DNA of 64,000 nt from the NCBI RefSeq assembly GCF_006345805.1, contig NC_042998.1, positions 130,138,001-130,202,000 on the forward strand. Reading direction: 5' to 3'. A model generated the notes under the pieces. It saw nothing but the letters and a program-made list of their open reading frames with translations. It was not told the origin of the DNA and did not search any database. The translations under genes and the position numbers were made by a program. The stretch comes from Octopus sinensis (taxonomy: Eukaryota). Below are positions 11,462 to 60,060 of this stretch, in pieces; positions within the stretch are counted from its first letter, which is position 1, and each line of letters starts with the position of its first letter.

Positions 11462-11649
11462 ACAGTTTTGGAATCGGGCATAGGTCGATTGTATCGACGT
11501 CAGTAACTCTACTGGCATTTATTTTAACGACCGAGAAAGGATTAACGGCAAAGTCGACCTCTGCGAAATTTGAACTCTGAAGGTAGAGACAGACAAATGC
11601 CACTAAGCATTTTGCCCGGCGTGCTAACGATTCTGACAGCTCACCGCCT
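11462..11649 (-). mobile_element. Family A SINE
   Basis: GGCAAAGTCGACCTCTGCGAAATTTGAACTC...GCCCGGCGTGCTAACGATTCTGACAGCTCACCGCCT. Confidence 0.8.
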
Positions 11650-11679
11650 GAGTCCTTGCTTTAATATCAAATGCTTATG

Positions 11680-11888
11680 AGGCTACGAGATGGCAAAATC
11701 GTTAACACGCCAGGCAAAATGTTTAGCGGTATTTCATCTGTCTTTACGTTCTGAGTTCAAATTCCACCTTGGTCGACTTTGTCTTTCATTCTTTTTGGGG
11801 TGGATAAAATAGTACACTGGGCACGATATAATCGACTTACATTCTTCCCCGAATTTGCTGGCCTTATGCCAAAATTTAAAACTAATAT
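11680..11888 (+). mobile_element. Family A SINE, inverted relative to the adjacent copy
   Basis: GATGGCAAAATCGTTAACACGCCAGGCAAAATG...GTTCTGAGTTCAAATTCCACC..GGTCGACTTTG. Confidence 0.8.
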
Positions 11889-22343: not shown

Positions 22344-24997
22344 TATATATATAAATAGATAAATGCATATATATATATATTTATATATAAATAGATATGT
22401 GTGTATTTATATGCGTATATACGTATGTGTGTACTTGTGTGTATATGTGTGTATGTGTGAGTGTGTGTATATGTGTGAATGTGTGTGTGTATGCACATAT
22501 TTATGTGGCAAGAACATTAGACCATTAGTCAAAATGTCTTGAATTATTTAGTTTCGTTATTTTACATACCAATATTTATTTATCGCACAGAAGTCGATTT
22601 TGATTTTCATTCTTCCAGATTTATGAAATCATATCCAACTTATTAATTAAATACTTCCCTAAATATGTTCGACCTTATACCGATATTGATATTATTTGTA
22701 TAAGGGTTTAATCATTCTCTTCTTTCACATTCATTCGAAGTCATTAAATAATTCATTAAACTCACCATTCATTCATACATCCATATTGTCCTTGTTTTCA
22801 ACTGTTAATTTTATTTGAGAGCGATAGCTTTCAAGCAATTTTATGCCTCATAACCGACTGGAACTTAGAACATGTGAATCGAGCTTAGAACATGTGCTGT
22901 TCGATCTTGTTTTCCTAGTTAATGAACATTGTATGGAACTAGTGGTTCTTATTATGTCAGCGAAGTACTGATGTTGCTGTCACTATAAATAAATTGGTTA
23001 GTCTATTTAGTAGTAAAAGATAACATTGACAGGTACATATTATGTCAGAAAAATTTCGCCAACTTCTCATCTCATTTGACCTAATCTACACATTCCTTCA
23101 GTACAGAGGTAATCGAATGCTAGGTTTGTTTTTAGTCCTATTTTATTTAACATAATAAACCTAAAATGCAGAGGACCTGGTAACTGGTGATGGCTATCAT
23201 GAAAAAAATGTAGTGAAGTTTATGAGTTAGAATTAGTTCATATATCTTGGATATAAAGATAAAAGTGATATATTGCTTATGAAAATGACACTGCATGTTA
23301 TATTTTCTTCTAGCCACTGCTATCATCATATAAATTTCAAAGATGTTTACCTCTAGTTCGCAGCCACACAATTTTGGCAAGAGTTCAGCCAGTTTAAATG
23401 ACAACCGTGCAAATTTGCTAATTTATCAAGCCCTGAAAGATGATATACAAAACCGTCCAGGGAACAACGAAATCCATTTTTTCCTGTACCGTCCGATTCG
23501 ATGAATTTGCTGTCATCTATTATAATTTTTCAACTCTGATTCCTGATTCATGGATAGTTTTATATTTTTCTCTAATATTTATATTTATTTAATTTTTTTT
23601 AATCACATAACAAATAATTTGGCTTAATCCTCTTCTATTTGTTTCATTAAATTGTTAATAACTGGTGGTACACTTAATTACTTGTGCCGTTACGGTCACA
23701 CATTGATCTTTGACAGCTTTTACATCTATTTAATACAAGCATCTCTAACGAAGACACTTATATGAAAATGACTTAATGTCTAGTTATTTTGCTTCCTAGT
23801 ACAGCAGCCACTAGCTGCTACTTACACTCCTATTTCACCCAACGCTTTGTGAGAAGATTTTTCTGAAATCCGTGGTTTCTGCACTTCTCCTGTGACAAAA
23901 TAAACCATATAAAATATGCGTTTATTTAACTTTTCCATTAGTTTATTAATAAATTTATTTCTTCATCACCGCTTCAAAAAGAAAAGTATCATTCAATTTT
24001 TAATTCGATCTTGCATTTGCACCCGCTGTATTTTGTATTTATTTATTTCCTCATTTCATTATATTCCCTTACTTTATATATTTTCTTATTTTATAATTTT
24101 TTATTCTATTGTTTCATTTTGAAATATTTCCCACCTTAATCTATTTTCTATAATACTATTTTCGATTATATATTCGTACATAAAGTGGTAACATATTTAA
24201 TAAAATATTAGTGATCACTAACATATTTGATGAAGTTAGGCAAGCAGTGTTAATTAATTACAGGAAAACCCGTGCTAAGGAGAAAAAATCATAAACTAAA
24301 TTATTAATTCTGATCAAGAAATGTTGGGGAGAAAACACACGAATTAAAATTAATTAATATTAATTAAAAATAGAATACAGTGTCTCATATATTTCTGTCA
24401 TTACTATGACAGCTCTGGACATACTTCAGTGTATGTTTAATATATTTAATTTGTGTTCATATTAAATACATACTCTCACCCAGATATGGTGCCCATCCTT
24501 TTGATTAATCAATGTTCATTGATGTATTGTTCTCTTAATATTTATTATATATTTCTTGGTTGCAAGCACTCACACGGGTGCGGGCGTAAACACACTCAAC
24601 ATGTACTTGTGTCTCTGAGTGTGTGCGCGCGTATAAATATATATAAACGAAGCTATATATGTACAAATATTCATACATGTCTATGCCCACACTCACGAAT
24701 GCAGCACTACGCGCATACATAGACATACATACACTCACACAAAATCGATGGAGATTAAGGTATACTAAAATCGACTACATTTAAAAATGAAGGTTAAGTG
24801 TCTCCTTAACACCGACAGTCTCACCGGACCGGAATTCTGCAGACTAGTGAAGAACTGAATAGATATCGTATTCAGATAAATTTAATTGCGTTGGATTTGA
24901 TTCGGAAAAATTTCGATTGTATGTGATACGGTGTTAATCATCAATGTTGGTGGTCCCTTGTTTGTACATCTTAATCTATTAATATACATCTATATTA

Positions 24998-25388
24998 AAG
25001 CGGAGAGCTGGCAGAAACGTTAGCATGCCGGGTGAAATGCTTTGCGGTATTTCGTCTGTCTTTACGTTCTGAGTTCAAATTCCGCCGAGGTCGACTTTGC
25101 CTTTCATCCTTTTGGGGTCGACAAATTAAGTACCAGGTGAGTACTGTGGTCGATCTAATCGACTTGCTCCCTCTCCAAAAATTTCGGACCTTATGCCTAG
25201 AGTAGAAAAGAATAACTGGCAAATTGGCAAATCGTCTTTACGTTCTGAGTTCCATCTTCGCCATCGAATTTATCTTTTGATCCTTTCAAGATGGATAAAA
25301 TAAATGCCAGCTGAGTATTGGGGTCGATGTAATCAATTTATCTCCTCCCTCGGAATTGCTCACTTTGTATTAAATATCGAAATCAGTA
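24998..25388 (+). mobile_element. Family A SINE followed by a 5'-truncated second copy
   Basis: GAGCTGGCAGAAACGTTAGCATGCCGGG...GAGTTCAAATTCCGCCGAGGTCGACTTTGCCTTTCATCC. A second CGTCTTTACGTTCTGAGTTC starts near 25232. Confidence 0.8.
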
Positions 25389-28200: not shown

Positions 28201-28432
28201 CTCTTTTACTTGTTTCAGTCATTTGATTGCGGTCATTTGACTGTGGCCATGCTAGAGCACCGCCTTTAGTCGAGCAAATCGACCCCAGGACTCATTCTTT
28301 GTATGCTTAGTACTTATTCTATCAGTCTCTTTTGCCGAATTGCTAAGATACGTGGACGTAAACACACCAGCACCGGTTGTCAAGCGATGTGGGGGGGGGC
28401 AGACACACAGACACACATACACACACACACTC

Positions 28433-28469
<37 letters not shown>

Positions 28470-28635
28470 TACGAAGGGCTTCTTTCAGTTTCCGTCTACC
28501 AAATTCAATCACGAGGCTTTGGTCCACCCGAAGCTATAGTCGGAAACACTTGCCCAAGGTGCCACGCAGTGGGACTGAATCTGGAACCATCTTGTTGGTA
28601 AGCAAGTTTCTTACCACACTGCCACTCCTGCGCCT
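28201..28635 (-). mobile_element. Full-length family B SINE (tRNA head, CORE-like segment, internal microsatellite, LINE-like tail)
   Basis: Reverse strand: AGGCGCAGGAGTGGCAGTGTGGTAAG...GGTTCCAGATTCAGTCCCACTGCGTGGCACCTTGGGCAAGTG...(TA/TG)n...GGCGGTGCTCTAGCATGGCC. CCTTGGGCAAGT resembles the CORE-SINE domain; octopus OR SINEs are known CORE-SINEs. Confidence 0.85.
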
Positions 28636-28820
28636 ATACACACATAAATGTATATATACATATACATGTATAAGCACTCAAACTCATTTATATATACATA
28701 TATTTCTGCAGGTGTGCATGTGTATGTACACCCGTACAGATATACAGGTGAATGTGTCTTGTTCTGTTTGTGTGTGTGTGTGTGTTCATATTTTTTTAAA
28801 GAGTTAATTTGGTATGTCAT

Positions 28821-29053
28821 AAGGCAGTGTGCTGGCAGAACCGTTAGCACGCCGGGCGAAATGCGTAGCCGTATTTCGTCTGCCGCTACGTTCTGAGTTC
28901 AAATTCCGCCGAGGTCGACTTTACCTTTCATCCTTTCGGGGTCGATAAATTAAGTTCCAGTTACGTACTGGGGTCGATGTAATCCACTTAATCCGTTTGT
29001 CTGTCCCCGTTTGTCCCTTCTATGTTTAGCCCCTTGTGGGTAATAAAGAAATA
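28821..29053 (+). mobile_element. Full-length family A SINE
   Basis: Head GCTGGCAGAACCGTTAGCACGCCGGGCGAAATG, box B-like GAGTTCAAATTCC, tail GTAATAAAGAAATA. Confidence 0.85.
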
Positions 29054-29288
29054 CATAAATATGTTTTCTAACACAATGTTCTGTAACGTATGTACTTCAC
29101 ATACGCATATACGTTCATTCACATGCACGGTGAAACACACACACGCACACACACACGTTCCCGTTGACATTCACATTGGCAACCACATCAATACGCATAT
29201 ACACACATTGCTATATACAGACACTACCTTACACTCAGGTTCCTTCTCCCTCACCTCTCACACTTCTTTTTACAATATATGTAGGGCT

Positions 29289-29865
29289 AAGGTGGCGAGC
29301 TGGCAGAAACTTTAGAACGCCGGGCGAAATGCTTAGCCGTATTTCGTCTGCCGTTACGTTCTGAGTTCAAATTCCGCCGAGGTCGACTTTGCCTTTCATC
29401 CTTTCGAGGTTGATTAAATAAGTACCAGTTACGCACTGTCCTTGCTTATCCTCTCTGTGTTTAGCCCCTTGTGGGTAGTAAAGAAATAGGTATTTCGTCT
29501 GTCTTTACGTTCTGAGTTCAAATTCCACCGAGGTCGACTTTGTCCTTCATCCTTTCGGGGTCGATGAATTAAGTACTAGTTTCGCACTGGGGGTCGATGT
29601 TATCGACTTAATCCCTTTGTCTGTCCTTGTTTGTCCCCTCTATGTTTAGACTCTTGTGGACAATAAAGAAATAAGAAACATTAGCATACCTGGCGAAATG
29701 TTTAGTGGTATTTCGTATGTTTTTACGTTCTGAGTTCAAATTCCGCCGAGGTCAACTTTGCCTTTCATCCTTTCGGTGTCGATAAATTAAGCGCCAGTTG
29801 CATACTGGGGTCGATCTAATCGACTGGCCTCCTCTCCAAAATTTTCGAGCCTTGAAAAGAAGAAT
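29289..29865 (+). mobile_element. Head-to-tail trimer of family A SINE units
   Basis: Three GTTCTGAGTTCAAATTCC.CCGAGGTC motifs (~29358, ~29510, ~29728), joined directly after AATAAAGAAATA-type tails. Confidence 0.8.
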
Positions 29866-30870: not shown

Positions 30871-31680
30871 CGACGTGTGGTCCAAATGTATCCGACCTAT
30901 GGCGAAAAAACAAGTAATATTAAAGACTTACAGTTTTGATTTAGTCTCCTTCAAATTATTTGCCTTAGGAGTCTATACACTTCTGGCAGCATTCCTGACA
31001 CTGATGGAAACATTTCTGGAAATCACTTTTTGGGATGCTGTAGAGCTGTGTCATCGAATTTTGCTTGATGTCCTCTCTTGACTCAAATCTCCTCCTTAGT
31101 ATTTTTTGAGGCTTGGGAATAGCCAAGATTCACACGGAGCAGGGTCTGGGGAGTAGGAAGCCTGTTGAACAAGTGGTGTGTTTTCCTTGAGGAAAAATGC
31201 TTGGACGACGTGGGCGGAATGAACGGGTGCGTTGTCATGGTGAGGTTGCCAATTCTTTGTTGCCCACCTTCGGCAACAGTCTCCTCAACAGTCACACGAT
31301 GGTCTTCATAGAATATTCCTCGAACCTTTGCAATTATTTTGTCGTTTCTGTTAGTCGGTGATCTGCCACAATGTGGATCACAGTCCTCTGAGGTGCGGCC
31401 ATCTTTGAATCCGTTGTACTTCTCTTTTATTTCTGCTTTTCCCGTAGCATCATCTCCAAAGGCCTTCTAAATTTTCTCGATAGTCTGGGCTTTCGTATCA
31501 CCAAATATTTTGCATAATTCTATACACTATCTTTGCTCAATGCACTCGGTCATATTTAGACGAAAGTTTTTGCGCATGCTCAGGAAGGACGCGGCCACCT
31601 AATCCCCATGCGGACTTTGCTCACACATTATTGTTTTGTGCCCAAAAAATCAAGATCTGATAATTTTGACACCTTGTCTG
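30871..31680 (-). mobile_element. Internally deleted mariner transposon (pseudogene)
   Basis: Minus strand from ATG 31553: MTECIEQR*CIELCKIFGDTKAQTIEKI..FKDGRTSED..GRSPT..HRVTVEE. It then jumps to LHHDNAPVHS..YSPD..FQKCF..EGD* (stop 30941). Degenerate TIRs at ~30871-30898 and ~31650-31680. Confidence 0.85.
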
Positions 31681-34458: not shown

Positions 34459-35166
34459 CAAAGAGGAACTTGAGAAAGAAAAATCTAGTTATTCTTTGAT
34501 ACACCTGTTTCGTAAAAGTAAAAGGGAAGCACCGATAAAAAAAAGAGCTTCAGAAGTAAGGAAATATAAACATCGGTAAAATCAACACGGTATTTGCATT
34601 GTTGAAAAACGCAGAAAAACAATTCTTGCATTGACTCAAAAATTAAGTTTCGCTCGATTGTTGTTGGAAAATAATTTGCTTCAAAATTTCTTTCTTTGGT
34701 ATTTCATATTGTCTTCTGAAGGCTAGCATGAGCTTCGAGCAATCTCATCATTCTCAGACAAGGAAAAAGATAGCTTTGATGCTAAAATAGAAACATTTTG
34801 TATGTGTATAAAATTGAACGCATATTTGTAATGTTCCAACTTACAGATCTCAAGGTTGTGGCTAGGGGGATGAAGTATCACATTGTGGCATATTCTTTCA
34901 AGGTGAAGCTTATAGGCTACGTGAATTTCGCTGATAAATTTAGTACTTGCACCTAATTCCGGGTACTCCTGCAAGTGCGCGCTAGCATACATATATACAC
35001 ATACATATGCGCGTGCGTGTATATATATATATATTATATATGTGTGTATATATATATATACATACATATAACACGCACGCACACATGCACACGCACACAC
35101 ACATATATACGCATCTCTGTGTGTTTGTGTGCGCATGTGTATACAAACAACACACATAATACATAC

Positions 35167-35204
<38 letters not shown>

Positions 35205-35458
35205 TGAACTTAAAAATGGTCTTTGACTATTAATTTTTTCCCACTAGGCCGCTGGTGGCAAAAAAATTCTACAAAATGTTTTTTGCCACCCTATATTGAT
35301 TAATTATGAATTTTCTGGAATTCCGTAATGGAATCGACGGCTTATATTTATTTGCTGCCGATAAATTGGCGCAGTGCGCGATTGATTGAAAATTTTAGGT
35401 CAGATAACCTTGGCAGGGTCGGAAATGCCTCGTGAAAATATCTGTTCCGACTTGGGCT

Positions 35459-35565
35459 ATTTCTTACTGAAGAATCTGAGGGCCTATGGAAGATTGGCTT
35501 GATTTAATTTAATCAGGTTAGTTTACCATTAAACAGCAGATGAAACGGTGCATCGTATAAGAAAT
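35459..35565 (+). ncRNA. Type I hammerhead ribozyme, copy 1 (predicted cleavage after A35557)
   Basis: Helix I ATTTCTTA 35459-66 / TAAGAAAT 35558-65. Core CTGAAGA 35467-73. Helix II ATCTG 35474-78 / CAGAT 35537-41. GAAA 35542-45. Helix III ACGG-TGCA-TCGT. GTA cleavage triplet. Confidence 0.9.
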
Positions 35566-35943
35566 TACAGGGTAAAGGTTTTTAAATTTTCTCTGGTTAC
35601 GGAATTAATTTTTATTTGCGGTTGAAGCTTTGGCTGTTATTTCTAGGGGTGAATGGCCTATTATGGCCGTTCCTTGATTGTTGATGTTGAACTTAAAAAT
35701 GGTCGTTGACTATTTAATTTTTTCCCACTAGGCCGCTGGTGGCAAAAAAATTCTACAAAATGTTTTTTGCCACCCTATATTGATTAATTATGAATTTTCT
35801 GTTTAATTCCGTAATGGAATCGACGGCTTATATTTATTGTGCCGATAAATTTGGCGCGAGTGCGATGATTTGAAAATTTTAGGTCAGATATTACCTTGGC
35901 AGGGTCGAAATGCCTCGTGAAAATATCTGTTCCGACTGGGGCT

Positions 35944-36050
35944 ATTTCTTACTGAAGAATCTGAGGCCTATGGAAGATTGGCTTGATTTAATTTAATCAG
36001 GTTAGTTTACCATTAAACAGCAGATGAAACGGTGCATCGTATTAAGAAAT
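35944..36050 (+). ncRNA. Type I hammerhead ribozyme, copy 2 (extra T after the cleavage nucleotide)
   Basis: Same core and helices as copy 1, but reads TCGT-A-T-TAAGAAAT, a 1-nt insertion 3' of A36041. Could be a real variant or a sequencing error. Confidence 0.75.
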
Positions 36051-36431
36051 TACAGGGTAATGGTTTTTAAATTTTCTCCTGGTTTACGGAATTAATTTTT
36101 ATTTGCGGTTGAAGCTTTGGCTGTTATTTCTAGTGGGTGAATGGCCTATTATAGCCGTTCCTTGATTGTTGAATGTGAACTTAAAAATGGTCTTTGACTA
36201 TTTAATTTTTTCCCACTAGGCCGCTGGTGGCAAAAACTTCTACAAAATTTTTTTGCCCCCTATATTGATTAATTATGAATTTTCTGTTTAATTCCGTAAT
36301 GGAATCGACGGCTTATATTTATTTGCTGCCGATAAATTTGGCGCGAGTGCGATGATTTGAAAATTTTAGGTCAGATATTACCTTGGCAGGGTCGGAAATG
36401 CCTCGTGAAAATATCTGTTCCGACTTGGGCT

Positions 36432-36538
36432 ATTTCTTACTGAAGAATCTGAGGGCCTATGGAAGATTGGCTTGATTTAATTTAATCAGGTTAGTTTACC
36501 ATTAAACAGCAGATGAAACGGTGCATCGTATAAGAAAT
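36432..36538 (+). ncRNA. Type I hammerhead ribozyme, copy 3 (predicted cleavage after A36530)
   Basis: ATTTCTTA 36432-39, CTGAAGA 36440-46, ATCTG...CAGAT, GAAA, helix III ACGGTGCATCGT, A36530, TAAGAAAT 36531-38. All core nucleotides intact. Confidence 0.9.
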
Positions 36539-36924
36539 TACAGGGTAATGGTTTTTAAATTTTCTCCTGGTTTACGGAATTAATTTTTATTTGCGGTTGA
36601 AGCTTTGGCTGTTATTTCTAGTGGGTGAATGGCCTATTATAGCCGTTCCTTGATTGTTGATGTTGAACTTAAAAATGGTCTTTGACTATTTAATTTTTTC
36701 CCACTAGGCCGCTGGTGGCAAAAAAATTCTACAAAATTTTTTTTTGCCACCCTATATTGATTAATTATGAATTTTCTGGTTAATTCCGTAATGGAATCGA
36801 CGGCTTATATTTATTTGCTGCCGATTAAATTTGGCGCGAGTGCGATGATTTGAAAATTTTAGGTCAGATATTACCTTGGCAGGGTCGGAAATGCCTCGTG
36901 AAAATATCTGTTCCGACTTGGGCT

Positions 36925-37030
36925 ATTTCTTACTGAAGAATCTGAGGGCCTAGGAAGATTGGCTTGATTTAATTTAATCAGGTTAGTTTACCATTAAACA
37001 GCAGATGAAACGGTGCATCGTATAAGAAAT
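36925..37030 (+). ncRNA. Type I hammerhead ribozyme, copy 4 (predicted cleavage after A37022)
   Basis: ATTTCTTA 36925-32, CTGAAGA 36933-39, ATCTG...CAGAT-GAAA, intact helix III, TAAGAAAT 37023-30. One base is missing in the helix II insertion (CCTAGG vs CCTATGG). Confidence 0.9.
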
Positions 37031-37152
37031 TACAGGGTAAAGGTTTTTAAATTTTCTCCTGGTTTAACGGATTATTTTTTTATTTGCGGTTGAAGCTTTG
37101 GCTGTTATTTCTAGTGGGTGAATGGCCTATTATGGCCGTTCCTTGATTGTTG

Positions 37153-37207
<55 letters not shown>

Positions 37208-38960
37208 ATATTGCCAATTACCTCCCCTTAGATTTTTCTACATGCTGATTCATTTGCAAACTCTTATCCAAAGCAACAAGAACTAAAAGTGGACCGCGAA
37301 ACATGAACTGCGAAACCGGTCCACTACTATAATGTTCCATCTTTTAGAATATATCAAAAATATATAAATTGTGTGCATTTCTTTCTCTCGTTATATATAT
37401 TTCCCATTACAACTCACTACGTACGAAATTAGATACACATATACGCATGGCTATTCTAATCTAGAAGTTTTCAGGACTATTCTTTTCCATGAACTTTGTC
37501 TTTGTAAAAGATGCGAAATGGCCCTTGGTTACGTATTTATATAGATCCAAGTCCTTTTGGGTAAGAATCCATCCAAGTTTGCTGATGAAATTGGTTCAGT
37601 AAAATACTTCAAGACACGAGTAAGATAGGGTAAATGTGATTGCTGTAAATTTTACTTATTTGCAGACGAGCTCGTAGCTCTTGCATGGCTTTAATGGAAC
37701 CCACTCAGCTGCACGCATCTGCGAGTTACACACATTTTAGTTGTGAGCAGCTACATCTGTGTACGATGATATCAGACCCAGGTCGTCACATGTATACACA
37801 TATGTAACACACTTACACACACATACACCATGGAAGATACGCTATTAATATCACGTCGTATTTATGATCAACTCAGCAACCAAAATCTACTCAAACTGTA
37901 TCAATGCCATTCCTATCACACCTGTCGCAAAGTCGACGACGACGACAACAACGACAACAACAACAAAAACAGATGATTATTCTGTAGTTTTATTACCGCT
38001 TACTCGTGATATAATCGATGTAACAAAGCCTCATAATCTCATTCTCACCACAGATTCGGAAACCTTGTAAAAGTTCATATGTGTTTGAAATAACCCAATC
38101 TCGATATTGATTTGAAGCATTAGAATGATTGATAAATGAAACTGCTATCGTACAGAATGCCCCGCCATAATTCTGCTGAACGTTTTTGATATTTTTATGC
38201 CGGCCTTTAATTTTGATTTATTAATAGATGTCTTCTGGCAGATGCGTGCCTGTACTTGCATGTTGGTAGGTGTGTGTATGTATATGTGTGATTGTATGCA
38301 TGAGTCTCTGTGTGTGTGTGTGTGTGCGTGTGTATGTGTGTGTTAGAGTGTCGTGGTGCCTCGCAATAATGGTAACAATATGTTCTGTTATATCGTCGCT
38401 GTGGCTGCGTTAGTAATTCTGTCGGTGGGGCAATGGTGGGTTTTATGTCGCTGCGTGATTTGTTTGTTAGAAACATTGCTTGATTAGGATACTTGCCTCT
38501 TGTTGCTGTTTGTTGCGGTTGCGGCGATGGGAGAGGTGTTGGCCTTGATTTTGTTGTTTTGGTCGTGATATCCACGTATACTATGAATAGCTTATGTTTT
38601 CGTGATGCATGTATACGTGTGTACATGTGCCTTTCTGTGTATGATATAATATTGAATGAGTATATCTGCATGCGTTCAATGTTGATCGTGCATGTATATA
38701 CACGCGTGCCTTGATTATATGCGTGTAACACAAAGGATATATATAAAAAAGAGAATTTCAAAAAAAAAAAGAAAAATAGCAAAAGTAAAATGATGAATCA
38801 AGGTAAAGAAAGAAAAGAAAATTTCCTGAATCATCATTAATGGGATTGCATGATTGGAAAACCTACTTCATGTTGTCTCCGTTTAGGGGAAGCAGCATAC
38901 ACACTTAATGGTAATAACACAGATACTGAAACATACTCGCTTGCGTTTATAAAAACATTT

Positions 38961-38991
<31 letters not shown>

Positions 38992-40539
38992 CAATACATA
39001 TGCACACACACACGCGTGTATATATATTGGTTTATGCATATAGCATGCGTGCGCATGTCCGGAGGAACAATAAACGACATAAATGCTATTAAGAGAATAA
39101 AAAGCGAAATACAAAAAATAACGAATTAAAAAAAATGAATTAAAATTGGAAATAGATTATGCAGAAAAAGAAAAAAAATATATGCAGACAAGTAAGGAGC
39201 ACAATAAATAGTTGTATTGTTGTATGTCATTTATGCTTGTTGAGCAATTTTGTTAGTCAGGAAAACTTTGCGTTTTATTTTAAATGTATCAGCATTTTTG
39301 AGATGAAAATGTTCGGAGTGGAAGGTTAAATTTAAAGTCCAAAATACAGTGTCCACAATTAATTTATCACTTGACGTTTCAAATCTGAAGTCATTTCACG
39401 TTTGGGTTCCTCTGGAAGCTTATTTTAGGGTAATCGCAGCAGCAAAGATATATTGATATCGACTTTGTTGATGCTATTGTTGTTACTAGTATTGTGAACT
39501 GGCAGAACCATTGTACGTTGATATTACAGACTCGAGAGAGTGTGTTACAAAATGTCTAGAGCTATTTAGCTACGGCTCTTTACGATTTGAGTTCAATTCT
39601 TTTCACTTCATCTTTGCCTTTCATCATTTCGAGGTTGGTAAAATTAAATACCATCCACGTAAGTGCCAACATGAAATTATGCACTATACGTACGAAATCG
39701 GGTAGACATCACATTTAGCAAAGTATCTCCAAATATCAGTAAGGCGTGCTGTGTCACAAGCATTCGTGAGATTAGCAAATGTTATATACAGGATGTGATT
39801 CTACTTTCTCATCGATCTGTTCTACTGCAAAAGTCATAATAGCAGTTTCCCTACATCATTGTACACATGCATACATATGCGCTTACTTCCATACATAAAA
39901 TGATACATACATACATATATATATATTATATATATATATATTATATATATATATGTCTGTGTATGTGTGTGTGTATGTATGTATGAAATAACGGATGCGA
40001 AAGTAACAAAATGTGGTAGACCAAATTCGCAACATGCTCAAACCTTCTAGAAGGATCAAAATTCCTCTTCAAAGAGGGACAAAAATTCAAAATCAAATTT
40101 AATTGTACTTGTGCTTCAGAAAACCTGATTTATGACATAAGATGCTCGGGCTGCCACCAAAACTACATAGGATCCACGGGATTATCGCTCAGACGTAGAT
40201 ACACTCTGCATCGACAACAGATTGTATTCCCAGAATACAGAATGATACCTTTTAATGAACATATTGATAAATGCGCAAAGCAACTACTACCACAATTTAT
40301 AATCTTTCCATTCTATCAATGAGCTATTTGAACACCAACACATGTTAGATTAAACAAAGAAACCTTCTTTATTGAAAAATATAAGCCAAAACGTAACAAT
40401 TTCTGACATTTTTAAATGAGGAAACTCGCCTCATTGAAAAAATATAAAGCAAAACCTAACCAATTATAACATTCTATTCCTTCTAAACTAAATCAAGTTT
40501 AATTAGTCATTCCCAACATGTTTGATTATCTCCCTTATA

Positions 40540-41750
40540 CCGGAAAAAATCGCTGATTACCTTTCCCTGCCTGGAACTCCATATTTCGCAACATAGCGAA
40601 GACATCAAAGCTAGAAAAATACTGACCACCCACTGGCAACTTTCATTCAGTATTCTTACCGATAGGATGTATGGGAGACAAATTGATGGTGGTAACGGTA
40701 GAGAGACATAAGGACAGTCCATACTGTACAGCCTTTGAATGTTGCATTGTATCACTCAGACAACACTTATTGCACAGTAAACAAAAAAAGGAGTATATTC
40801 AATATATACTCAAAAGTGAGAGCAACATCTTCAGTTAGAGAAGAAGTACCGAGTAGGTGCTCTGAGAGTAAAACTGTCTTCTACAACCAAAAGAAGGCTA
40901 GACTGGCCTAACTAAACAGAAAGTTGGAGGAGAATCAGGCATCATATCAGAAGAAAGGTAATGTATGGATAAATATCCCGTAAGCTAAAGGATAACAACA
41001 TCATTTACCAGAATAATAGCTTGACGTGGACTTGAGATAGATACATTACATCTCATCTAGAAGCGTTTTCCTTCGCTATTCAGGAACAGGAGATAGTTGC
41101 TAAACACCTGATAAACAAAAGGGACATAAATACCTCCAAACCTCCACGTTGTGATAGAAAATATCGACTCTGCCATACCAGTGTAGAATATATCACCCAC
41201 ATCATCAACAGCTACTCCAAAATGTCTACGACACACTATCTACCCTTGAGACATCACATAGTTTCAAAACTTATTTAGAAGGCTGTCCGCTGGAAAGGCT
41301 GCACTGACCTATACATCAAAGAATGTCAGAACCAGCAGGTATTCACGCCTTTAAAATCAAGGAATGCTGGTGGCACACTGCAATAAAACAGCAATTCGGG
41401 GTCAAAAGTCATGCACTTTTGTAGAAGTCAGCTGTCCTCTGGATGTGAATGTACCATCAAAAGTTCAGGAAAAAAGATTAAATCTATGGTGAATTAATGC
41501 GGAACTTACAGCTCTCGTACCCTGACTATGAATTCTCATTTGTACCAATCTGCATCGGTGCATTAGGCTATATACCGATAAATTAACACAAAAAGCAAGA
41601 TAAACTAAGTTTTTTGAAGAGCCCAAAACAAAAAACAAAAAAATACTGACGTGTGTTCTCCAAATCCAAACTATTTGCGGTACATTGACAATTTGTAAGA
41701 CATTCCAAAGATTCTCTGTCTGAGATTCTTTCGATGAATAGATTCATACT
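40540..41750 (+). mobile_element. Decayed 3' part of an RLE-type non-LTR retrotransposon (R4/HERO/NeSL-like)
   Basis: Frameshifted peptides: DRMYGRQIDGG (post-RT thumb), EAFSFAIQEQEI, RLCHTSVEYITHII...RH (degenerate CCHC knuckle), WW, FVEVSCPLDVNV..K.QEK..YGEL, FVPICIGALG (restriction-like endonuclease region). Confidence 0.8.
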
Positions 41751-41908
41751 CTTGGGTGTCTGCATCGACAGCTCATCCAACACACGAATTTGGGTAAGTT
41801 TCTTAACTCATAAAAACTTGTTTTGTTATCAACCTGCTTGAACTCTCTCAAGAACTTAAATAGAATTAAAAGAAACATACCCTCACACGCACACGCGCAC
41901 ACACATGC

Positions 41909-41960
<52 letters not shown>

Positions 41961-42021
41961 ATATAAATATAAATATAAATATATGTATACATATATATAT
42001 ATATTTATATTTATATGTATA

Positions 42022-42052
<31 letters not shown>

Positions 42053-43326
42053 GCATATATACTTAAATACATATACAAATTCATATATCGTCACGTGCAT
42101 ACTTGTATTCTTGTGTGGTATGTAGATGCTCCGACGATTTCAACAAATGAACTCTCAGATGTGTGCTCAACTGAACTATTATGTCTTATGTGAATAACGG
42201 TCACATGTCTCGTTAAAGTAATTCACAGTTCGAAAGAATGTGACAAAATGTGTAATATGACGGATTTTTCCCGAGTTTTCTTCAATCTAATACATACGCA
42301 TGCACAATCTAATACATACACAAGGCTTGTGGCAACTCAAGGCTATGTTAAAATAAAACATTCACTCAACCTAGTGCTCAGTAGAATCGAACTAGGAACC
42401 TCATGACTGAGAAGCGAATAATTTACTCATGCATCCAAGCCTACGTTTGTACATACACGCATGCGAGCGTCTATGCTCGCATGGATGCACACAAGTATGC
42501 GCAGATTGTGCAAGCCTCAAATGCAAACACATAAAGGGTCATGAAATAAAGGTATAGAGAAGGACAAGGATATGTAGCCAGAAATTGATATCGTTATTCA
42601 CATACCTATCATGATGATCATCATTACCATCCTCGAATTCTCCTAATTACTGATTCGAACGAACGAACGAAGGGAAGTCTAGTCATTCGGGGAGTTGCTA
42701 GGTACGACAGATAAACATCACGCTCAAGCCACACCCTTATATCTGCGAAAGTATAGAGGAATATAAAAAGACATTGGACGGAATACTCTGGGTTATATGA
42801 TATTCCTGAGTCAGAAGAGGTGACAGTTCTGACTTAAATGAACTTACAACTTCAGCAGATTGGACTTGTGACTGACTGAGTAACATTTATTATCACATAC
42901 AAAATACAACCAAAACTCATAGGACCACACAGAACACACACATACACACACACAGAAATCCGCACACACATGCATTTACACGCAAAGTCACTCGCACAGA
43001 CAAATTTATATATGACAAAAAACTTAGATAAACATGTGCAATCATGTTTGTGAGCACCTAAATGCACAGATGTATGTACAAATAACATCTGGTGCAATAA
43101 CTCTGGTACATATTAAATATATATAAGTCAACCGTATATGTGATATGAAGGTAGGTTTCTGACAGAAGCTGCATATTATTAACTAGTTGCGACTACATCA
43201 CATACCCCGGGTCGAGTAGCAGCTGTAGTAATATTAAGCAGTATGCTACAGCAGCTCTATGATATATGCAAGGACAACAGTAGTCCATATACGCTCTCAG
43301 CAACACTGCTACATAGTACAAGACTG

Positions 43327-51488: not shown

Positions 51489-51668
51489 AGGCGTAGGAGT
51501 GGCTGTGTGGTAAGTAACTTGCTTACCAACGACATGTGTTCGGGTTCAGTCCCACTGCATGGCACCTTGGGCAAGTGTCTTCTACTATAGCCTTGGGCTG
51601 ACCAAAGCCTTGTGAGTGGATTTGGTAGGCGGAAACTGAAAGAAGCCCGTCGTATATATATATATATG

Positions 51669-51732
<64 letters not shown>

Positions 51733-51955
51733 TGTATGTATGTGTGTGTATATGTCTGTGTGTCTGTGTTTATCCACCCAGCATCGCTTGACAACCGATG
51801 CTGGTGTGTTTACGCCCCCGTAACTTAGCGGCTCGGCAAACGAGAGCGATAGAATAAGTACTTGGCTTACAACGAATAAGTCCCGGGGTCGATTTGCTCG
51901 ACTAAACGCGGTGCTCCAGCATGGCCGCAGTCAAATGCCTGAAACAAGTAAAGAG
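51489..51955 (+). mobile_element. Full-length family B SINE
   Basis: AGGCGTAGGAGTGGCTGTGTGGTAAG...CGGGTTCAGTCCCACTGCATGGCACCTTGGGCAAGTG...(TA)n(GA)n...GCGGTGCTCCAGCATGGCCGCAGTCAAATGCCTGAAACAAG. Confidence 0.88.
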
Positions 51956-54060: not shown

Positions 54061-54223
54061 GGCCCAAAATTTAGTGGGGAGAGGGTTAGTCGATTAGATC
54101 GACCCCGAAACGATGAAAGGCAAATTCGACATCGGTGGAATTTGAACTCAGAGCACAAAGACAGACGAAATACCACTATGCATTTCGCCCGGCGTCCTAG
54201 CGTTTCTGCCAGCTCACCGCCTT
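54061..54223 (-). mobile_element. Family A SINE with internal deletion
   Basis: GAAAGGCAAATTCGACATCGGTGGAATTTGAACTCAG...GCCCGGCGTCCTAGCGTTTCTGCCAGCTCACCGCCT. Confidence 0.75.
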
Positions 54224-54687: not shown

Positions 54688-55868
54688 TTATTAGGCTGTT
54701 CCGAAAATAATGGCCGCTCTAAGTGTTGTGTTGTGAAGCGCAATTTTATCATAGTATTTGAATTATATGTTAGTGTCATAGTATTTTAATTATGTTTTCG
54801 ACATATTTAATAATTGGTGTATGCTCTTTAAAAATTTTCTACTTATTTCAGACAGAAAACATTCTTGAAGTATAGGCGCCCTGAATTATGAAGATGACTG
54901 AAAAAGGACCTTCACTTATTTTTCTTGCATGAGTTCAAACTTGAACACCATGCTTCCCAAATTGCTGTCAATATCAATAGAGCATGGAGGGAGGGATCCA
55001 CAGGTGATCGCACAGTACGAAGGTGGTTTCAGAAATTCCGTAGTGGTGATGAGTGCCTTGAATAAGAAGAAGGTAGAGGATAATTATTCAGTCTTGACAA
55101 TGAACAATTGAAAGCAATTGTTGAACAAAACCCACGTCAAAGTTTCAGAGAGCTGTCTCAGGCACTTGGCATCAGTATTGCAACGCTCTCACGCAATCTG
55201 CAGAAGATTGATAAGGTGAAAAAGCTCGACAAATGGGCACTGCATGAAATCAATGAAAATCCAAAAGTTCGGCGTTTTGAAGTGTGCTCGATGCTCTTTC
55301 TGCGAAACACCAATAGTTTTGACCGAATAGTCATTTGTAACGAAAGGTGGATCCTTAATGATAATCGAAAGCGATCAGGTGAATGGCTTGATCGTGGTCC
55401 TCCAAACATTTCCCAAAGTCAAAGATGTATCAGCAAAAGATTATGGTGGCTGTCTGGTGGTCTGCAATTGGTGTTGTCCATTACAACTTTCTGGAAGCCA
55501 ATCAGATCATTATAGCAGAGGTTTACTGCAATCAACTCGCTGAAATGAATGCTCACTTGCAAAAAATGAGACCAGCATTGGTGAATCGGCGGGACCCAAT
55601 TCTACTCCACGATAATGCAAAACCACATGTTTCAAGAATGACGCTGCAGAAATTCACAGACTTAGGATACGAGACTTTACCACATCCTCAATATTCTCCT
55701 AATCTTTCACCCACTGACCACCATTTTTAGAGCATTTAAACACGTTTTTAAGTGATAAAACTTTCAGGTCCAAACCAGAGGTGGAATCAGCTTTCGAAGA
55801 TTTCTTGGCATGAAAGCCAATAAGTTTTTATCAATGAGGCATAAATAATCTCGTTGATCGATGGCAGA
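54688..55868 (+). mobile_element. Mariner transposon with decayed transposase (Hsmar1/SETMAR-like), 3' end missing
   Basis: TIR-like TTAGGCTGTTCCGAAAATAATGGCCGC. From ATG 54888 with stops and frameshifts: RTVRRWFQKFRSGD..LDNEQLKAIVEQNPRQ..KKLDKWALHE..DRIVICNERWI..KIMVAVWWS..ILLHDNAKPH..LPHPQYSPNLSPTDHH. Breaks off at LVDRW(Q) into (TCTA)n. Confidence 0.9.
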
Positions 55869-55996: not shown

Positions 55997-57262
55997 TAAT
56001 CCATGATGTGGTTGATGATGCGCAGACACGCGCTGAGACTGCGACATCTCAGGTTCTTCGTAGACGACGGTGAACAGATGTGGTCGCCGTTTGTGAGGCA
56101 CGCTTTCCCGCAGATCGTCTCCATGACCGAACTGCAGTAGTGGATCAAAAAGAGGCCGAGGAAGGGCGAATCGCACCGCGAGTGTCGCGTTGCTCTCAAG
56201 CAACTCTGCCGTCCCGGGTCGACCTTGAGTGACTCCATCACAACCCAAGCATTCTATAGGGGATTAGTGGCGGGGTGGTACAACGACGAGCTCGGGGCGA
56301 ACCTGGACGTCGACGAGGAATACCTGGCCCGCCTGTTCGGGACGACTTTCGGGCCAGAGCCCATGAACAACTTCCAGAGATCCCTGGCCTGGCAGTGCTA
56401 CCGAGAAGCGCTACCCGTTCGGGATAAGCTCTAAAGACACGGCTCGAGAAACACGAGATGCGGTCAGAGCGACGAAACCGTTCTGCACGCACTCGTGCAG
56501 TGTCCAAAAATTTCCGACCTGTGGGCTTATGTCGAACAACTGCTGTCACGTGTGGGACGAGTCGGTTTATCAGCTGTGTCTATCGTCAATATTGTCACGC
56601 CTCCTTCCTTCAAACGGGAAGGAAGAGCTATTTTCATCATCCTTGTGGCTATGGCGAAAGACTGTATCTGATGGACGCGTCTGAAAGGATTGGAGACAAA
56701 CACTATCCTCTCTGGTCAATCTCTCATCAACTTCTTCAAGTACCCCTTGAAAAGGAAAGTGAGAGTAGAGAGGCAAGTTTTGTCTAGCGAATGTTTTAAA
56801 AACAGATGGGTGAATGTAGCAAGGATGGCACGTATGAATGACGAAGCCACCTTGAGCATAATCCTTTGAGCCCAGAAATTGAAAACAGGGTTACCCACTT
56901 GCAAACAAATGTGGTAACATATAACAATATTGACCGAGGTCACCGTGGTCTTTTTTGTAGGCTTTTCTCCCCACGGATAAACCTTATCTGCTTCCCCCTT
57001 TACACCGTACATCATGACACTGTGATGCACGATCCCTATTGATCGTTTTTTCCTCTTCCCCTTTTTTCCTCTTTTTTCTTCTTTTTTCTTTTTTCTTTTC
57101 TTTTGTTTCTTTTCCTTTTTTTCTTTTTTTCTTTTTTCACTTTTACGATCCCTTTTGATCGAAAACCTACGCCACCTTTTTTTTTTCATCCCCCAAAAGA
57201 AAAGCTCTACCTTGTAATTTTTCCCATCTGTGTGCAGCCCTGTGTGGCCAATAAAGAAACTT
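55996..57262 (+). mobile_element. 5'-truncated Tx1/L1-group non-LTR retrotransposon (ORF2 C-terminus and 3' UTR)
   Basis: One frame 56003-56869 with two internal stops: ...SLAWQCYREALPVRDKL*RHG..RCGQSDETVLHALVQCP..LWAYVEQLL..AMAKDCIWWTRLK..FKNRW. This is the L1/Tx1 zinc-knuckle region. GC-rich body, pyrimidine-rich 3' UTR, AATAAA near 57250. Confidence 0.88.
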
Positions 57263-59195: not shown

Positions 59196-59379
59196 GATAG
59201 GAAAATATATACATATATATGCATAAGAAAAATATATATATACATATATACTAACAGAATAAATTGTATAAATCACGCAAAGGTAAAAATAACACTGACA
59301 TCTCATTTTAACAGATATATTTACCAAAATTACATATAAATATCTTGAAATACTAAGCAGTAAATTTATCCATTAATGT

Positions 59380-60060
59380 CCCCATTAGTTTTAACCGCGG
59401 ACTCCAGACGACTTTGGAATCCCCTGCAACTCTTCTGGACGGCCCCTTTATTTAAGTTGGTGAAGGCTGCTATAATCCTTGCATTCAGTTCATCTTTGGT
59501 GTTACAAAGAGTTTTGTTAGGTGGTCAGGTGTTAGGTGTCATGTGATCAGCAGAAATTATCTGACAGCCATTACTGAGTTTTCCTGCTTGTGTGGCATGG
59601 TGCAGAGTCATGTTGCCAGACATAGGGTCTTCCAGCAGCAAAACTCTTGACCCAGGGCGCACTACCTCCGCTAGGCACTTGATTTAAACTTCCGTGTTGA
59701 GTCTGAAGCGTGTGGGAAGATGAATGGAGGCATAACATTACCATCACTAGTGATAATTACAAACACCATGATGTTGACTGAATGTTTGATTTTTATCACT
59801 CGGTACATGTCCTCAGATTGCACTGTTCTCAGATTGACACCGAAACTCTATTATATAATCGCATTGGAAATTCCGGCGCGAATGCCAAGCAGTACAGCAT
59901 GTCGTTTTCAAATTTGTGGCAGAATGAATCGCGTCATGATTCTGCTTTTCTCACAGACAGTGCCCAATTGAGCCTACTATTCTGTGTAGTGAGCAAATCA
60001 AAAACAATGTGCATGGACGAAAGAATATGAAATGGCGACAATTTACTCATCGCACTTTGT
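59380..60060 (-). mobile_element. Internally deleted Tc1/mariner-superfamily transposon (maT/DD37D-like)
   Basis: Minus-strand fragments: KRHAVLLGIRAG, IMVFVIITSDGNVMPPFIFP, YVWQHDSAPCHTSRKTQ.WLSDNF, KDELNARIIAAFTNLNKGAVQKSCRGFQSRLE. TIR-like ACAAAGTGCGATGAGTAAATTGTCGCC at the 60060 end. Confidence 0.75.

What the first reader, a model, noticed from the sequence alone, without database searches (positions are those of the whole stretch)
35204..37154. Retrozyme-like element: four-unit tandem array, each unit encoding a hammerhead ribozyme, predicting ~490-nt self-processed (circular) RNAs
Seen: four head-to-tail ~488-bp non-coding units, each with ATTTCTTA-CTGAAGA-ATCTG...CAGAT-GAAA-CGGTGCATCGTA-TAAGAAAT on the + strand. 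Helix I, the CUGANGA/GAAA core, helix III and an NUH (GUA) site are all present, giving a Type I hammerhead. Predicted cleavage after 35557, 36041, 36530 and 37022 yields monomers of 484-492 nt. Established: tandem repeats with Type I hammerheads (newt satellite 2, schistosome Sm-alpha, metazoan non-LTR retrozymes) are transcribed as multimers, self-cleave, and can circularise; they are thought to be mobilised in trans by an autonomous RT such as a Penelope-like element. Inference: this is a retrozyme family of this (probably octopus) genome, with a monomer at the long end of sizes I recall for animal retrozymes. I cannot verify whether it has been described.
Basis: partly seen in the sequence, partly recalled or inferred. 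Interest (0 to 1): 0.95.

Follow-up and report, generated by a model that had tools for sequence, protein, structure and literature searches.

The report
Tandem repeat carrying hammerhead ribozymes
A four-copy, 488-base non-coding tandem repeat in an animal genome carries a self-cleaving hammerhead ribozyme motif in each copy (three intact), which fits a known class of small mobile elements that spread through circular RNA, so it is a new example of a known kind, not a new kind.

Summary
The array is real: 35204-37154, period 488, 4.0 copies, 96% identical and non-coding. A complete type I hammerhead lies on the + strand in units 1, 3 and 4. It has an 8-bp helix I, the CUGAAGA core, a 5-bp helix II with a long hairpin extension, GAAA, a 4-bp helix III and a GUA site. 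Unit 2 has an extra T right after GUA that shifts helix I.

Chance is unlikely. No motif with helix I of 6 bp or more appeared in 94 Mb of simulated sequence. The ribozyme fold lies only 1.5 kcal/mol above the predicted optimum.

Helix III is weak as a hairpin but forms a 12-bp self-duplex, so a newt-style double hammerhead is likely. The array sits inside a (TA)n tract and both ends fall in the same phase of the unit. About 2.9 kb downstream is a 5'-truncated endonuclease remnant of a Penelope-like element.

By the published sequence criteria this is an animal non-LTR retrozyme. The 488-bp size is within the reported range.

Weak points:
- No Rfam hammerhead model matches.
- The 10.1-11.1 pair is A-U rather than G-C.
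- No other copies or relatives could be retrieved.
- Cleavage, expression and circles are untested.

It is a new member of a known kind, of moderate interest.

The parts
35204..37154 (+). Whole tandem array: four head-to-tail units of about 488 bp (units 35204-35691, 35692-36177, 36178-36665, 36666-37154)
   Evidence: TRF period 488, 4.0 copies, 96% matches. MAFFT alignment A1. Self-BLAST finds the four copies and nothing else in the window.
35459..35565 (+). Hammerhead 1, intact type I; predicted cleavage after 35557
   Evidence: Descriptor scan: helix I 8 bp, helix II 5 bp, helix III 4 bp, CUGAAGA/GAAA core, GUA site.
35944..36050 (+). Hammerhead 2, probably impaired: an extra T (36042/36043) directly after GUA shifts helix I; nominal cleavage after 36041
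   Evidence: Sequence and alignment column 362. Not found by the descriptor even at relaxed settings.
36432..36538 (+). Hammerhead 3, intact; predicted cleavage after 36530
   Evidence: The ribozyme-competent fold is -29.2 against an MFE of -30.7 kcal/mol for the 107-nt motif. In the whole unit it is -129.1 against -130.6.
36925..37030 (+). Hammerhead 4, intact (1-nt deletion in the helix II extension); predicted cleavage after 37022
36447..36519 (+). Helix II of hammerhead 3: 5 bp next to the core (AUCUG/CAGAU), two small internal loops, then an imperfect hairpin of about 18 bp; the same in every unit
   Evidence: MFE fold of 36425-36545: -31.9 kcal/mol, z = -3.4 against 200 shuffles. Constrained folds.
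36520..36530 (+). End of the core, helix III and cleavage site: AA-ACGG-UGCA-UCGU-A. The 12-nt segment ACGGUGCAUCGU is self-complementary, allowing G-U pairs.
   Evidence: Hairpin alone -0.2 kcal/mol; 12-bp self-duplex -17.5 kcal/mol.
35159..35204 (.). Left flank: (AT)23 microsatellite abutting the first unit
   Evidence: TRF; junction printed.
37153..37211 (.). Right flank: (AT)30 microsatellite abutting the last unit. The array starts at (T)TGAAC and ends at GTTGAT, which is four units minus 1-2 nt.
   Evidence: TRF; junctions compared with the three internal junctions.
40029..40403 (+). Context, not part of the array: 5'-truncated remnant of a Penelope-like element. Only the CxxC linker end and the C-terminal GIY-YIG endonuclease are present, with two in-frame stops.
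   Evidence: phmmer against 1.84 billion representatives: 1033 hits at E<=1e-3, best 1e-39. Full-length hits of about 745 aa carry RVT_1 plus a C-terminal GIY-YIG domain. tblastn shows that only their last ~123 residues are present in the window.

Best explanation
The locus is a copy of an animal non-LTR retrozyme, that is, a hammerhead-bearing satellite-like retroelement. The proposed cycle is as follows.

1. The + strand is transcribed as a multimer.
2. Each type I hammerhead cuts after GUA and releases monomers of about 490 nt with 5'-OH and 2',3'-cyclic phosphate ends.
3. Helix III is only marginally stable as a hairpin but is self-complementary. Cleavage therefore probably goes mainly through a double hammerhead formed by two neighbouring units, as in newt satellite 2 and axolotl retrozymes.
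4. The 8-bp helix I holds the monomer ends together, so a host tRNA ligase can close the circle.
5. The circle is copied round and round by the reverse transcriptase of a Penelope-like element.
6. The multimeric cDNA is inserted at a nick made by that element's GIY-YIG endonuclease in a (TA)n tract.

Shown here: the array, the complete hammerhead in three units, the accessibility of its fold, the self-complementary helix III, the (TA)n insertion site, the in-phase array ends, and a Penelope-like element remnant nearby. Inferred from published work on the family: transcription, cleavage, circularisation, and reverse transcription by a Penelope-like element.
For: - The array and its units are confirmed.
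- A full hammerhead consensus with an 8-bp helix I is present in units 1, 3 and 4 and nowhere else in the window on either strand.
- Chance expectation is about 0.003 per window for a much weaker motif. No motif with helix I >=6 bp appeared in 94 Mb of simulated sequence.
- The ribozyme-competent fold is within 1.5 kcal/mol of the MFE, both for the 107-nt motif and for the whole unit. The MFE itself already contains helices I and II.
- Hammerhead columns vary less among the four units than the rest of the unit: 3 of 108 against 44 of 381, Fisher p = 0.005.
- Helix III is -0.2 kcal/mol as a hairpin and -17.5 kcal/mol as a 12-bp self-duplex. The dimeric mechanism is documented for newt and ASBVd hammerheads (PMC6155905) and for axolotl retrozymes (PMC7229834).
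- The + strand monomer folds as a circle with z = -2.9 to -4.6 and 60-67% of bases paired.
- GC is 36% and the unit is non-coding.
- Units 3 and 4 meet the criterion of two consecutive complete hammerheads.
- The array interrupts a (TA)n tract. Perfect (TA)n tracts cover only 3% of the window. (TA)n is a preferred target of Penelope-like elements (PMC8557442).
- A canonical RT+EN Penelope-like element remnant lies 2.9 kb away on the same strand.
- Both array ends fall at the same point of the unit, as expected if a circular template was copied a whole number of times.
Against: - No Rfam hammerhead model matches, at gathering score or at E<=10, even when only 131 nt are searched.
- The 10.1-11.1 pair is A-U. 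The usual G-C is described as the most conserved pair of the consensus after 15.1-16.1 (PMC3088659).
- Helix II is far longer than in described type I hammerheads, and no loop-loop tertiary contact is evident, so monomeric cleavage may be slow.
- Unit 2 is damaged.
- Only one locus is available. The window holds no second copy and the collections within reach hold no relative. Copy number, dispersal and covariation are therefore untested.
- The unit shares no sequence with the nearby Penelope-like element remnant.
- The lower variation in the hammerhead rests on four non-independent copies and on an alignment with some gap-inflated columns.
Confidence: 0.7

Rival explanations
1. This is an ordinary satellite or minisatellite whose unit happens to contain a hammerhead-like string. 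It has no ribozyme activity and no RNA life cycle.
For: Hammerhead consensus matches are expected by chance in large databases (PMC3088659). No Rfam hammerhead hit was found. The 10.1-11.1 pair is non-consensus A-U. No relatives were found to show conservation.
Against: A motif of this quality was never seen in 94 Mb of simulated sequence. By extrapolation the expectation is well below one per Gb per strand. It would also have to fall inside a long-period tandem repeat, on the strand that folds better, with helix II extended into a stable hairpin (z = -3.4) and a self-complementary helix III.
Confidence: 0.1
2. The array is not an independent non-autonomous element. It is a tandem of extremely 5'-truncated 3' ends (pseudo-LTR pieces) of an autonomous Penelope-like element of this genome.
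For: Penelope-like elements insert as partial tandems, carry hammerheads in their pseudo-LTRs and favour microsatellites (PMC8557442). Xenopus retrozymes are sister to Penelope-like pseudo-LTRs. A remnant of such an element lies in the window.
Against: No reverse transcriptase or endonuclease coding remnant lies inside or next to the array. The unit has no similarity to the sequence downstream of the local remnant. The hammerheads of Penelope-like elements are usually minimal and lack helix III (PMC6155905), whereas this one has a 4-bp helix III and a long helix II.
Confidence: 0.15
3. The hammerhead is real, but the array spread at the DNA level. An extrachromosomal DNA circle excised from another array was amplified or simply broken, then re-inserted at a break in a fragile (TA)n tract. 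The ribozyme only processes transcripts.
For: The array is a whole number of units minus 1-2 nt, with both ends at the same point of the unit. This is what linearising a circle at one point gives. (TA)n tracts are break-prone (general knowledge, not tested here).
Against: The same end geometry is expected from rolling-circle reverse transcription that stops where it started. The (TA)n target and the Penelope-like element remnant fit retrotransposition. Nothing here discriminates the two directly.
Confidence: 0.15

Closest known systems
Metazoan non-LTR retrozymes (Cervera and de la Pena 2020, PMC7229834), for example the 350-390 bp repeats of the mussel Mytilus galloprovincialis and the 220-240 bp repeats of the coral Acropora millepora
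   Same: Head-to-tail repeats of a few hundred bp. One type I hammerhead per unit. AT-rich and non-coding. No LTR, PBS or PPT. A self-paired monomer RNA.
   Different: The unit is somewhat longer (488 bp) than the 150-450 bp given in that paper, though within the 51-972 bp of the 2026 survey. Helix II carries an insertion of about 58 nt that forms a long hairpin. Expression and circles are shown for those families and untested here.
Newt satellite 2 and axolotl retrozymes
   Same: A type I hammerhead in a tandem satellite, with a weak helix III that can be extended by pairing two ribozymes (double hammerhead). Here the 12-nt helix III segment is self-complementary.
   Different: No sequence relation was tested. 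Those are vertebrate families with short helix II. The dimeric mode here is an energy-based inference, not an assay.
Hammerheads in the pseudo-LTRs of Penelope-like elements (Cervera and de la Pena 2014; Arkhipova and co-workers)
   Same: Type I topology, association with tandem arrangements, and insertion in (TA)n microsatellites. A remnant of a canonical RT+EN Penelope-like element lies 2.9 kb away.
   Different: Those hammerheads are usually minimal and lack helix III. The array has no coding part and no similarity to the local remnant.
Schistosoma Sm-alpha hammerhead repeats
   Same: A type I hammerhead embedded in a repeated, non-coding, few-hundred-bp element of an invertebrate.
   Different: Sm-alpha is a SINE-like dispersed and tandem element with a compact helix II and defined loop-bulge tertiary contacts (recalled knowledge). 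No such contacts are evident here.
Plant LTR retrozymes (PMC4918200)
   Same: Non-autonomous, hammerhead-processed, circular-RNA intermediates.
   Different: Those have type III hammerheads in LTRs, plus PBS, PPT and 4-bp target duplications. None of these is present here.

Membership tests
Hammerhead ribozyme, type I | Conserved core: C3-U4-G5-A6-N7-G8-A9 and G12-A13-A14 | tested here: met
   CUGAAGA and GAA(A) are invariant in all four units.
Hammerhead ribozyme, type I | Three helices around the core, with helix I open and helices II and III closed | tested here: met
   Helix I is 8 bp and perfect, helix II is 5 bp plus an extension, and helix III is 4 bp with a UGCA loop, in units 1, 3 and 4. 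Unit 2 has helix I out of register.
Hammerhead ribozyme, type I | A15.1-U16.1 pair and a cleavage triplet NUH (H17 not G) | tested here: met
   A-U closes helix III and the site is GUA.
Hammerhead ribozyme, type I | A base pair at 10.1-11.1 closing helix II (G-C in most members) | tested here: met
   It is paired, but as A-U rather than the usual G-C. Natural active variants at this position are reported. This is a weakness, not an exclusion.
Hammerhead ribozyme, type I | Recognition by the curated Rfam hammerhead covariance models (a test of resemblance, not a defining property) | tested here: not met
   No hammerhead family matched at gathering score or at E<=10 on 64 kb, 2.2 kb or 131 nt. 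The insertion of about 58 nt in helix II is the likely reason. The tools could not test the motif with the insertion removed.
Hammerhead ribozyme, type I | Helices supported by compensatory changes among relatives | tested here: inconclusive
   Only four copies at 96% identity are available. Helices I-III do not vary except for the unit 2 insertion. No relatives were retrieved.
Hammerhead ribozyme, type I | Site-specific self-cleavage | not testable with these tools
   This needs in vitro transcription of a monomer and a dimer.
Animal non-LTR retrozyme | A tandem array with at least two consecutive units that each hold a complete type I hammerhead | tested here: met
   Units 3 and 4, plus unit 1.
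Animal non-LTR retrozyme | Non-coding, no LTR, PBS or PPT, and GC below 50% | tested here: met
   Stops in all frames. No protein relatives. GC is 36%. The units abut directly.
Animal non-LTR retrozyme | A monomer RNA predicted to be stable and highly self-paired | tested here: met
   Circular fold of the + strand: -125 to -132 kcal/mol, z = -2.9 to -4.6, 60-67% of bases paired. The fold is branched rather than rod-like.
Animal non-LTR retrozyme | Many copies dispersed in the genome (monomers, dimers, multimers) | not testable with these tools
   There is no second copy in the 64-kb window, and the source genome is not searchable here.
Animal non-LTR retrozyme | [quoted passage not shown] | not testable with these tools
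   No transcript data are within reach.
Animal non-LTR retrozyme | Co-occurrence with Penelope-like elements in the same genome | tested here: met
   An endonuclease remnant of a canonical Penelope-like element lies at 40029-40403. Whether an intact, active element exists in the genome is unknown.
Animal non-LTR retrozyme | Sequence relation to the pseudo-LTR of a resident Penelope-like element | tested here: inconclusive
   There is no similarity to the local remnant or its downstream sequence. Only one decayed remnant was available.
Autonomous Penelope-like element | An ORF with a reverse transcriptase and a GIY-YIG endonuclease | tested here: not met
   Nothing of the kind lies in or next to the array. 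The array is not itself a Penelope-like element.
Plant LTR retrozyme | Type III hammerheads inside LTRs, with PBS and PPT | tested here: not met
   The topology is type I and there are no LTRs.

The most novel reading that the evidence does not exclude
The hammerhead belongs to an overlooked structural subclass of type I ribozymes. Helix II is extended to about 25 bp, the 10.1-11.1 pair is A-U, and helix III is palindromic. No Rfam model sees it, and the usual descriptors with short helix II may miss it too. If so, surveys undercount retrozymes in this lineage. Separately, the whole-number array with both ends at one point of the unit would be a genomic footprint of rolling-circle copying that stops where it began.
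Probability: 0.25. Interest if true: 0.55.

Novelty: new member of a known kind. Interest (0 to 1): 0.4.

Why it matters
If the ribozyme is active, this is one more lineage in which small circular RNAs are made by hammerheads and spread with the help of Penelope-like elements. It would be a family that standard covariance models do not detect because of its long helix II. That matters for annotation, since such arrays are otherwise filed as plain satellites. It also matters for estimating how common ribozyme-made circular RNAs are in animals. The in-phase array ends inside a (TA)n tract are a concrete, checkable prediction about how these arrays are made. It does not change the current picture of retrozymes.

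Tried and rejected
- Rfam at gathering score on the whole window, at E<=10 on 35100-37300 and at E<=10 on 36420-36550. Only low-complexity microRNA-like noise in the flanking (TA)n tracts appeared, and no ribozyme family on either strand.
- A search for relatives through proteins. A pseudo-protein of both strands read across the array, which covers all six frames, was run against 5.8 billion proteins and found nothing.
- Exact 25-mer scans of metagenome and viral contigs found nothing.
- A gapped core pattern in metagenome and prokaryotic genome contigs gave 39 matches. All are in bacterial-type contigs, none is similar to the unit, and only three are weak hammerhead-like strings. I treated them as chance.
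- tRNA or SINE origin: ARAGORN finds no tRNA-like gene in the window.
- A full Penelope-like element next to the array: Pfam on the three + frames of 37155-42100 found nothing. tblastn with 745-aa Penelope-like proteins finds only the terminal endonuclease part.
- Organism identification failed. A window ORF is not on record. I ran no further search on this.
- Literature search for hammerheads or retrozymes in cephalopods. Nothing specific turned up in the held library.
Full report
**Observation.** Tandem Repeats Finder reports one long-period array in the window: 35204-37154, period 488, 4.0 copies, 96% matches. The four units align with 96% mean column identity. Self-BLAST finds no further copy of the unit in the 64 kb. 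The array is non-coding. Every frame is broken by stops and the longest stop-free stretch is 54 codons. A pseudo-protein covering all six frames has no relative among 5.8 billion predicted proteins.

**The hammerhead.** I wrote a descriptor for a type I hammerhead: helix I, CUGANGA, helix II with a loop of up to about 100 nt, GAAA, helix III, U, H, helix I. It finds three matches in the window, all on the + strand of the array: 35459-35565, 36432-36538 and 36925-37030. Each has an 8-bp perfect helix I, a 5-bp helix II, a 4-bp helix III (A-U, C-G, G-C, G-U) closed by UGCA, and a GUA site. Unit 2 (35944-36050) has an extra T directly after GUA.

**Chance.** A much weaker descriptor (helices of at least 5, 4 and 3 bp) gave one hit in 300 dinucleotide shuffles of the window on both strands. 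The same descriptor gave three hits in 94 Mb of first-order Markov sequence with the window's composition, and none with helix I of 6 bp or more. Extrapolating with the pairing probability of this composition, a motif with helices of 8, 5 and 4 bp is expected well below once per Gb per strand. It would also have to fall inside a long-period tandem repeat. Perreault et al. warn that consensus matches do occur by chance in very large databases (PMC3088659). Chance is therefore not excluded, but it is improbable.

**Fold.**
- The 121-nt region folds with z = -3.4. Helices I and II are already in the minimum-energy structure, and helix II continues through two small internal loops into an imperfect hairpin of about 18 bp.
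- Forcing the complete hammerhead secondary structure costs only 1.5 kcal/mol. This holds for the 107-nt motif (-29.2 against -30.7) and for the whole unit (-129.1 against -130.6).
- Helix III alone is marginal (-0.2 kcal/mol). Its 12-nt segment ACGGUGCAUCGU is self-complementary and forms a 12-bp duplex of -17.5 kcal/mol with a second copy.
- That is the arrangement of the double hammerhead described for newt satellite 2 and ASBVd (PMC6155905) and required by axolotl retrozymes (PMC7229834).
- The monomer from cleavage site to cleavage site (484-492 nt), folded as a circle, is more stable than shuffles on the + strand (z = -2.9 to -4.6, 60-67% of bases paired). It is more stable than the - strand by about 35-43 kcal/mol.
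- Among the four units, the hammerhead columns vary less than the rest: 3 of 108 against 44 of 381, p = 0.005. This is suggestive only. The copies are not independent and one misaligned stretch inflates the outside count.

**Weak points of the ribozyme call.**
- No Rfam hammerhead model matches, at gathering score or at E<=10, even when only 131 nt are searched. The likely reason is the insertion of about 58 nt in helix II, but the tools could not test the motif with the insertion removed.
- The 10.1-11.1 pair is A-U, whereas G-C is the most conserved pair after 15.1-16.1.
- With so long a helix II, the usual contact between loop 2 and helix I cannot form in the usual way. I see no obvious substitute.
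- Taken together, these points suggest a slow monomeric ribozyme that depends on the dimeric mode, if it is active at all.

**Surroundings.**
- The array interrupts a (TA)n microsatellite, with (AT)23 on the left and (AT)30 on the right. Perfect (TA)n tracts of 12 bp or more cover 3% of the window, so a random insertion would rarely land in one.
- The array begins at (T)TGAAC and ends at GTTGAT, while the internal junctions read GTTGAT-GTTGAAC. The insert is therefore four units minus one or two bases, with both ends at the same point of the unit. This is what a circular template gives, whether it is copied a whole number of times or linearised at one point. It is not expected from a random stretch of a linear multimer.
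- About 2.9 kb downstream on the same strand, 40029-40403 encodes a GIY-YIG endonuclease with two in-frame stops. Alone it is a sub-threshold Pfam match (E = 0.072), and the word-indexed protein search missed it.
- A full phmmer scan of 1.84 billion representatives found 1033 relatives, the best at E = 1e-39. The full-length ones, about 745 aa, carry RVT_1 centrally and GIY-YIG at the C-terminus, which is the canonical Penelope-like architecture.
- tblastn shows that only their last ~123 residues are present in the window. It is thus a severely 5'-truncated copy. It starts about 45 bp after a compound (TA)n/(TG)n tract.
- Penelope-like elements carry hammerheads in their pseudo-LTRs and favour (TA)n targets (PMC8557442). 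Animal retrozymes co-occur with them and are related to their pseudo-LTRs (bioRxiv 10.64898/2026.07.22.740005).
- The unit shares no detectable sequence with the local remnant.

**Comparison with what is known.** Cervera and de la Pena (PMC7229834) define animal non-LTR retrozymes as follows:
- no LTR, PBS or PPT;
- GC below 50%;
- stable, self-paired RNAs, expressed as linear and circular forms.

Li et al. call a tandem repeat an active retrozyme if at least two consecutive units hold complete hammerheads. They report family consensus lengths of 51-972 bp. The present array meets all the sequence-level criteria, with units 3 and 4 as the consecutive pair. The 488-bp unit is unremarkable in that range. 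Dispersal in the genome, expression, cleavage and circles could not be tested. I found no report of hammerhead retrozymes in cephalopods in the held literature, and I could not establish which organism the window comes from.

**Mechanism proposed.**
1. The + strand is transcribed as a multimer.
2. Hammerheads cleave it after GUA, mostly through double hammerheads between neighbouring units, and release monomers of about 490 nt.
3. Helix I holds the ends together and a host tRNA ligase closes the circle. This is the route favoured by Cervera and de la Pena.
4. A Penelope-like reverse transcriptase copies the circle by rolling-circle synthesis, primed at an endonuclease nick in a (TA)n tract.
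5. Synthesis stops where the enzyme meets the start of its own product. This would explain the whole number of units.

The sequence features behind steps 2 and 3 and the insertion geometry are shown here. The RNA steps and the identity of the enzyme are inferred.

**Rivals.**
- A chance motif in a plain satellite (0.1).
- A tandem of truncated 3' ends of a Penelope-like element, rather than an independent element (0.15).
- DNA-level spread through extrachromosomal circles, with the ribozyme only trimming transcripts (0.15).

**Verdict.** It is a new member of a known kind, with an unusually long helix II, not a new kind. Interest is moderate.

Noticed in passing
window 40029-40403 (+), within a block of about 39975-41890 bounded by (TA)n tracts at 39903-39954 and 41912-42061: A 5'-truncated remnant of a canonical Penelope-like element: the end of the CxxC linker plus the C-terminal GIY-YIG endonuclease, with two in-frame stops. 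The window holds no reverse transcriptase part.
   Followed up: yes
L001 about 1222-1275 (ENA metagenome scaffold; 72% nucleotide identity to window 40000-40392): Downstream of the endonuclease of the closest relative of that remnant is a minimal hammerhead-like string, GCUAA-CUGACGA-AAACAUUUUG-GAAA-CCGG-UU-UUAGC. It has a 5-bp helix I, no real helix III, a palindromic CCGG loop and a weak helix II starting with A. It did not pass my descriptor.
   Followed up: partly
L002 2577-2587 (Logan contig carrying an intact 745-aa Penelope-like ORF): CUGAUGAG begins about 210 nt after the stop codon and is cut off by the contig end. It may be the element's 3' hammerhead.
   Followed up: no
window 1540-1780, 11481-11870, 24995-25197, 28820-29053, 29288-29439, 29489-29853, 54098-54223: An interspersed repeat family of about 130-230 bp in at least eight copies (74-89% identical, both orientations), including a cluster of four at 28.8-29.9 kb. 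It is SINE-like in size, but ARAGORN finds no tRNA-like part.
   Followed up: partly
window 28234-28635 and 51489-51937 (inverted): A pair of repeats of about 450 bp at 78% identity, each next to a microsatellite. The family is unknown.
   Followed up: no
window 54898-55727 (+), 31086-31466 (-), 59369-59847 (-), 61216-61392 (+): Decayed mariner/Tc1-like transposase fragments. Pfam Transposase_1 gives E = 1.8e-17 for 55392-55727. The others were judged by eye only.
   Followed up: partly
window 56435-56668 (+) and 41036-41275 (+): C...C...H...C strings like the zinc-binding tail of LINE reverse transcriptases. zf-RVT gives E = 0.012 for the first and nothing for the second.
   Followed up: partly
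window 35254-35290 and the same place in every unit: A 12-13-bp hairpin inside the unit, GGUGGCAAAAAAA...UUUUUUGCCACC. It is the strongest local structure outside the hammerhead. Unit 3 has changes on both arms. Its function is unknown.
   Followed up: no
whole window: The microsatellite load is very high: 129 TRF rows, mostly (TA)n, (CA)n and (ACAT)n. GC is 34.6% and no convincing host exon was seen.
   Followed up: no
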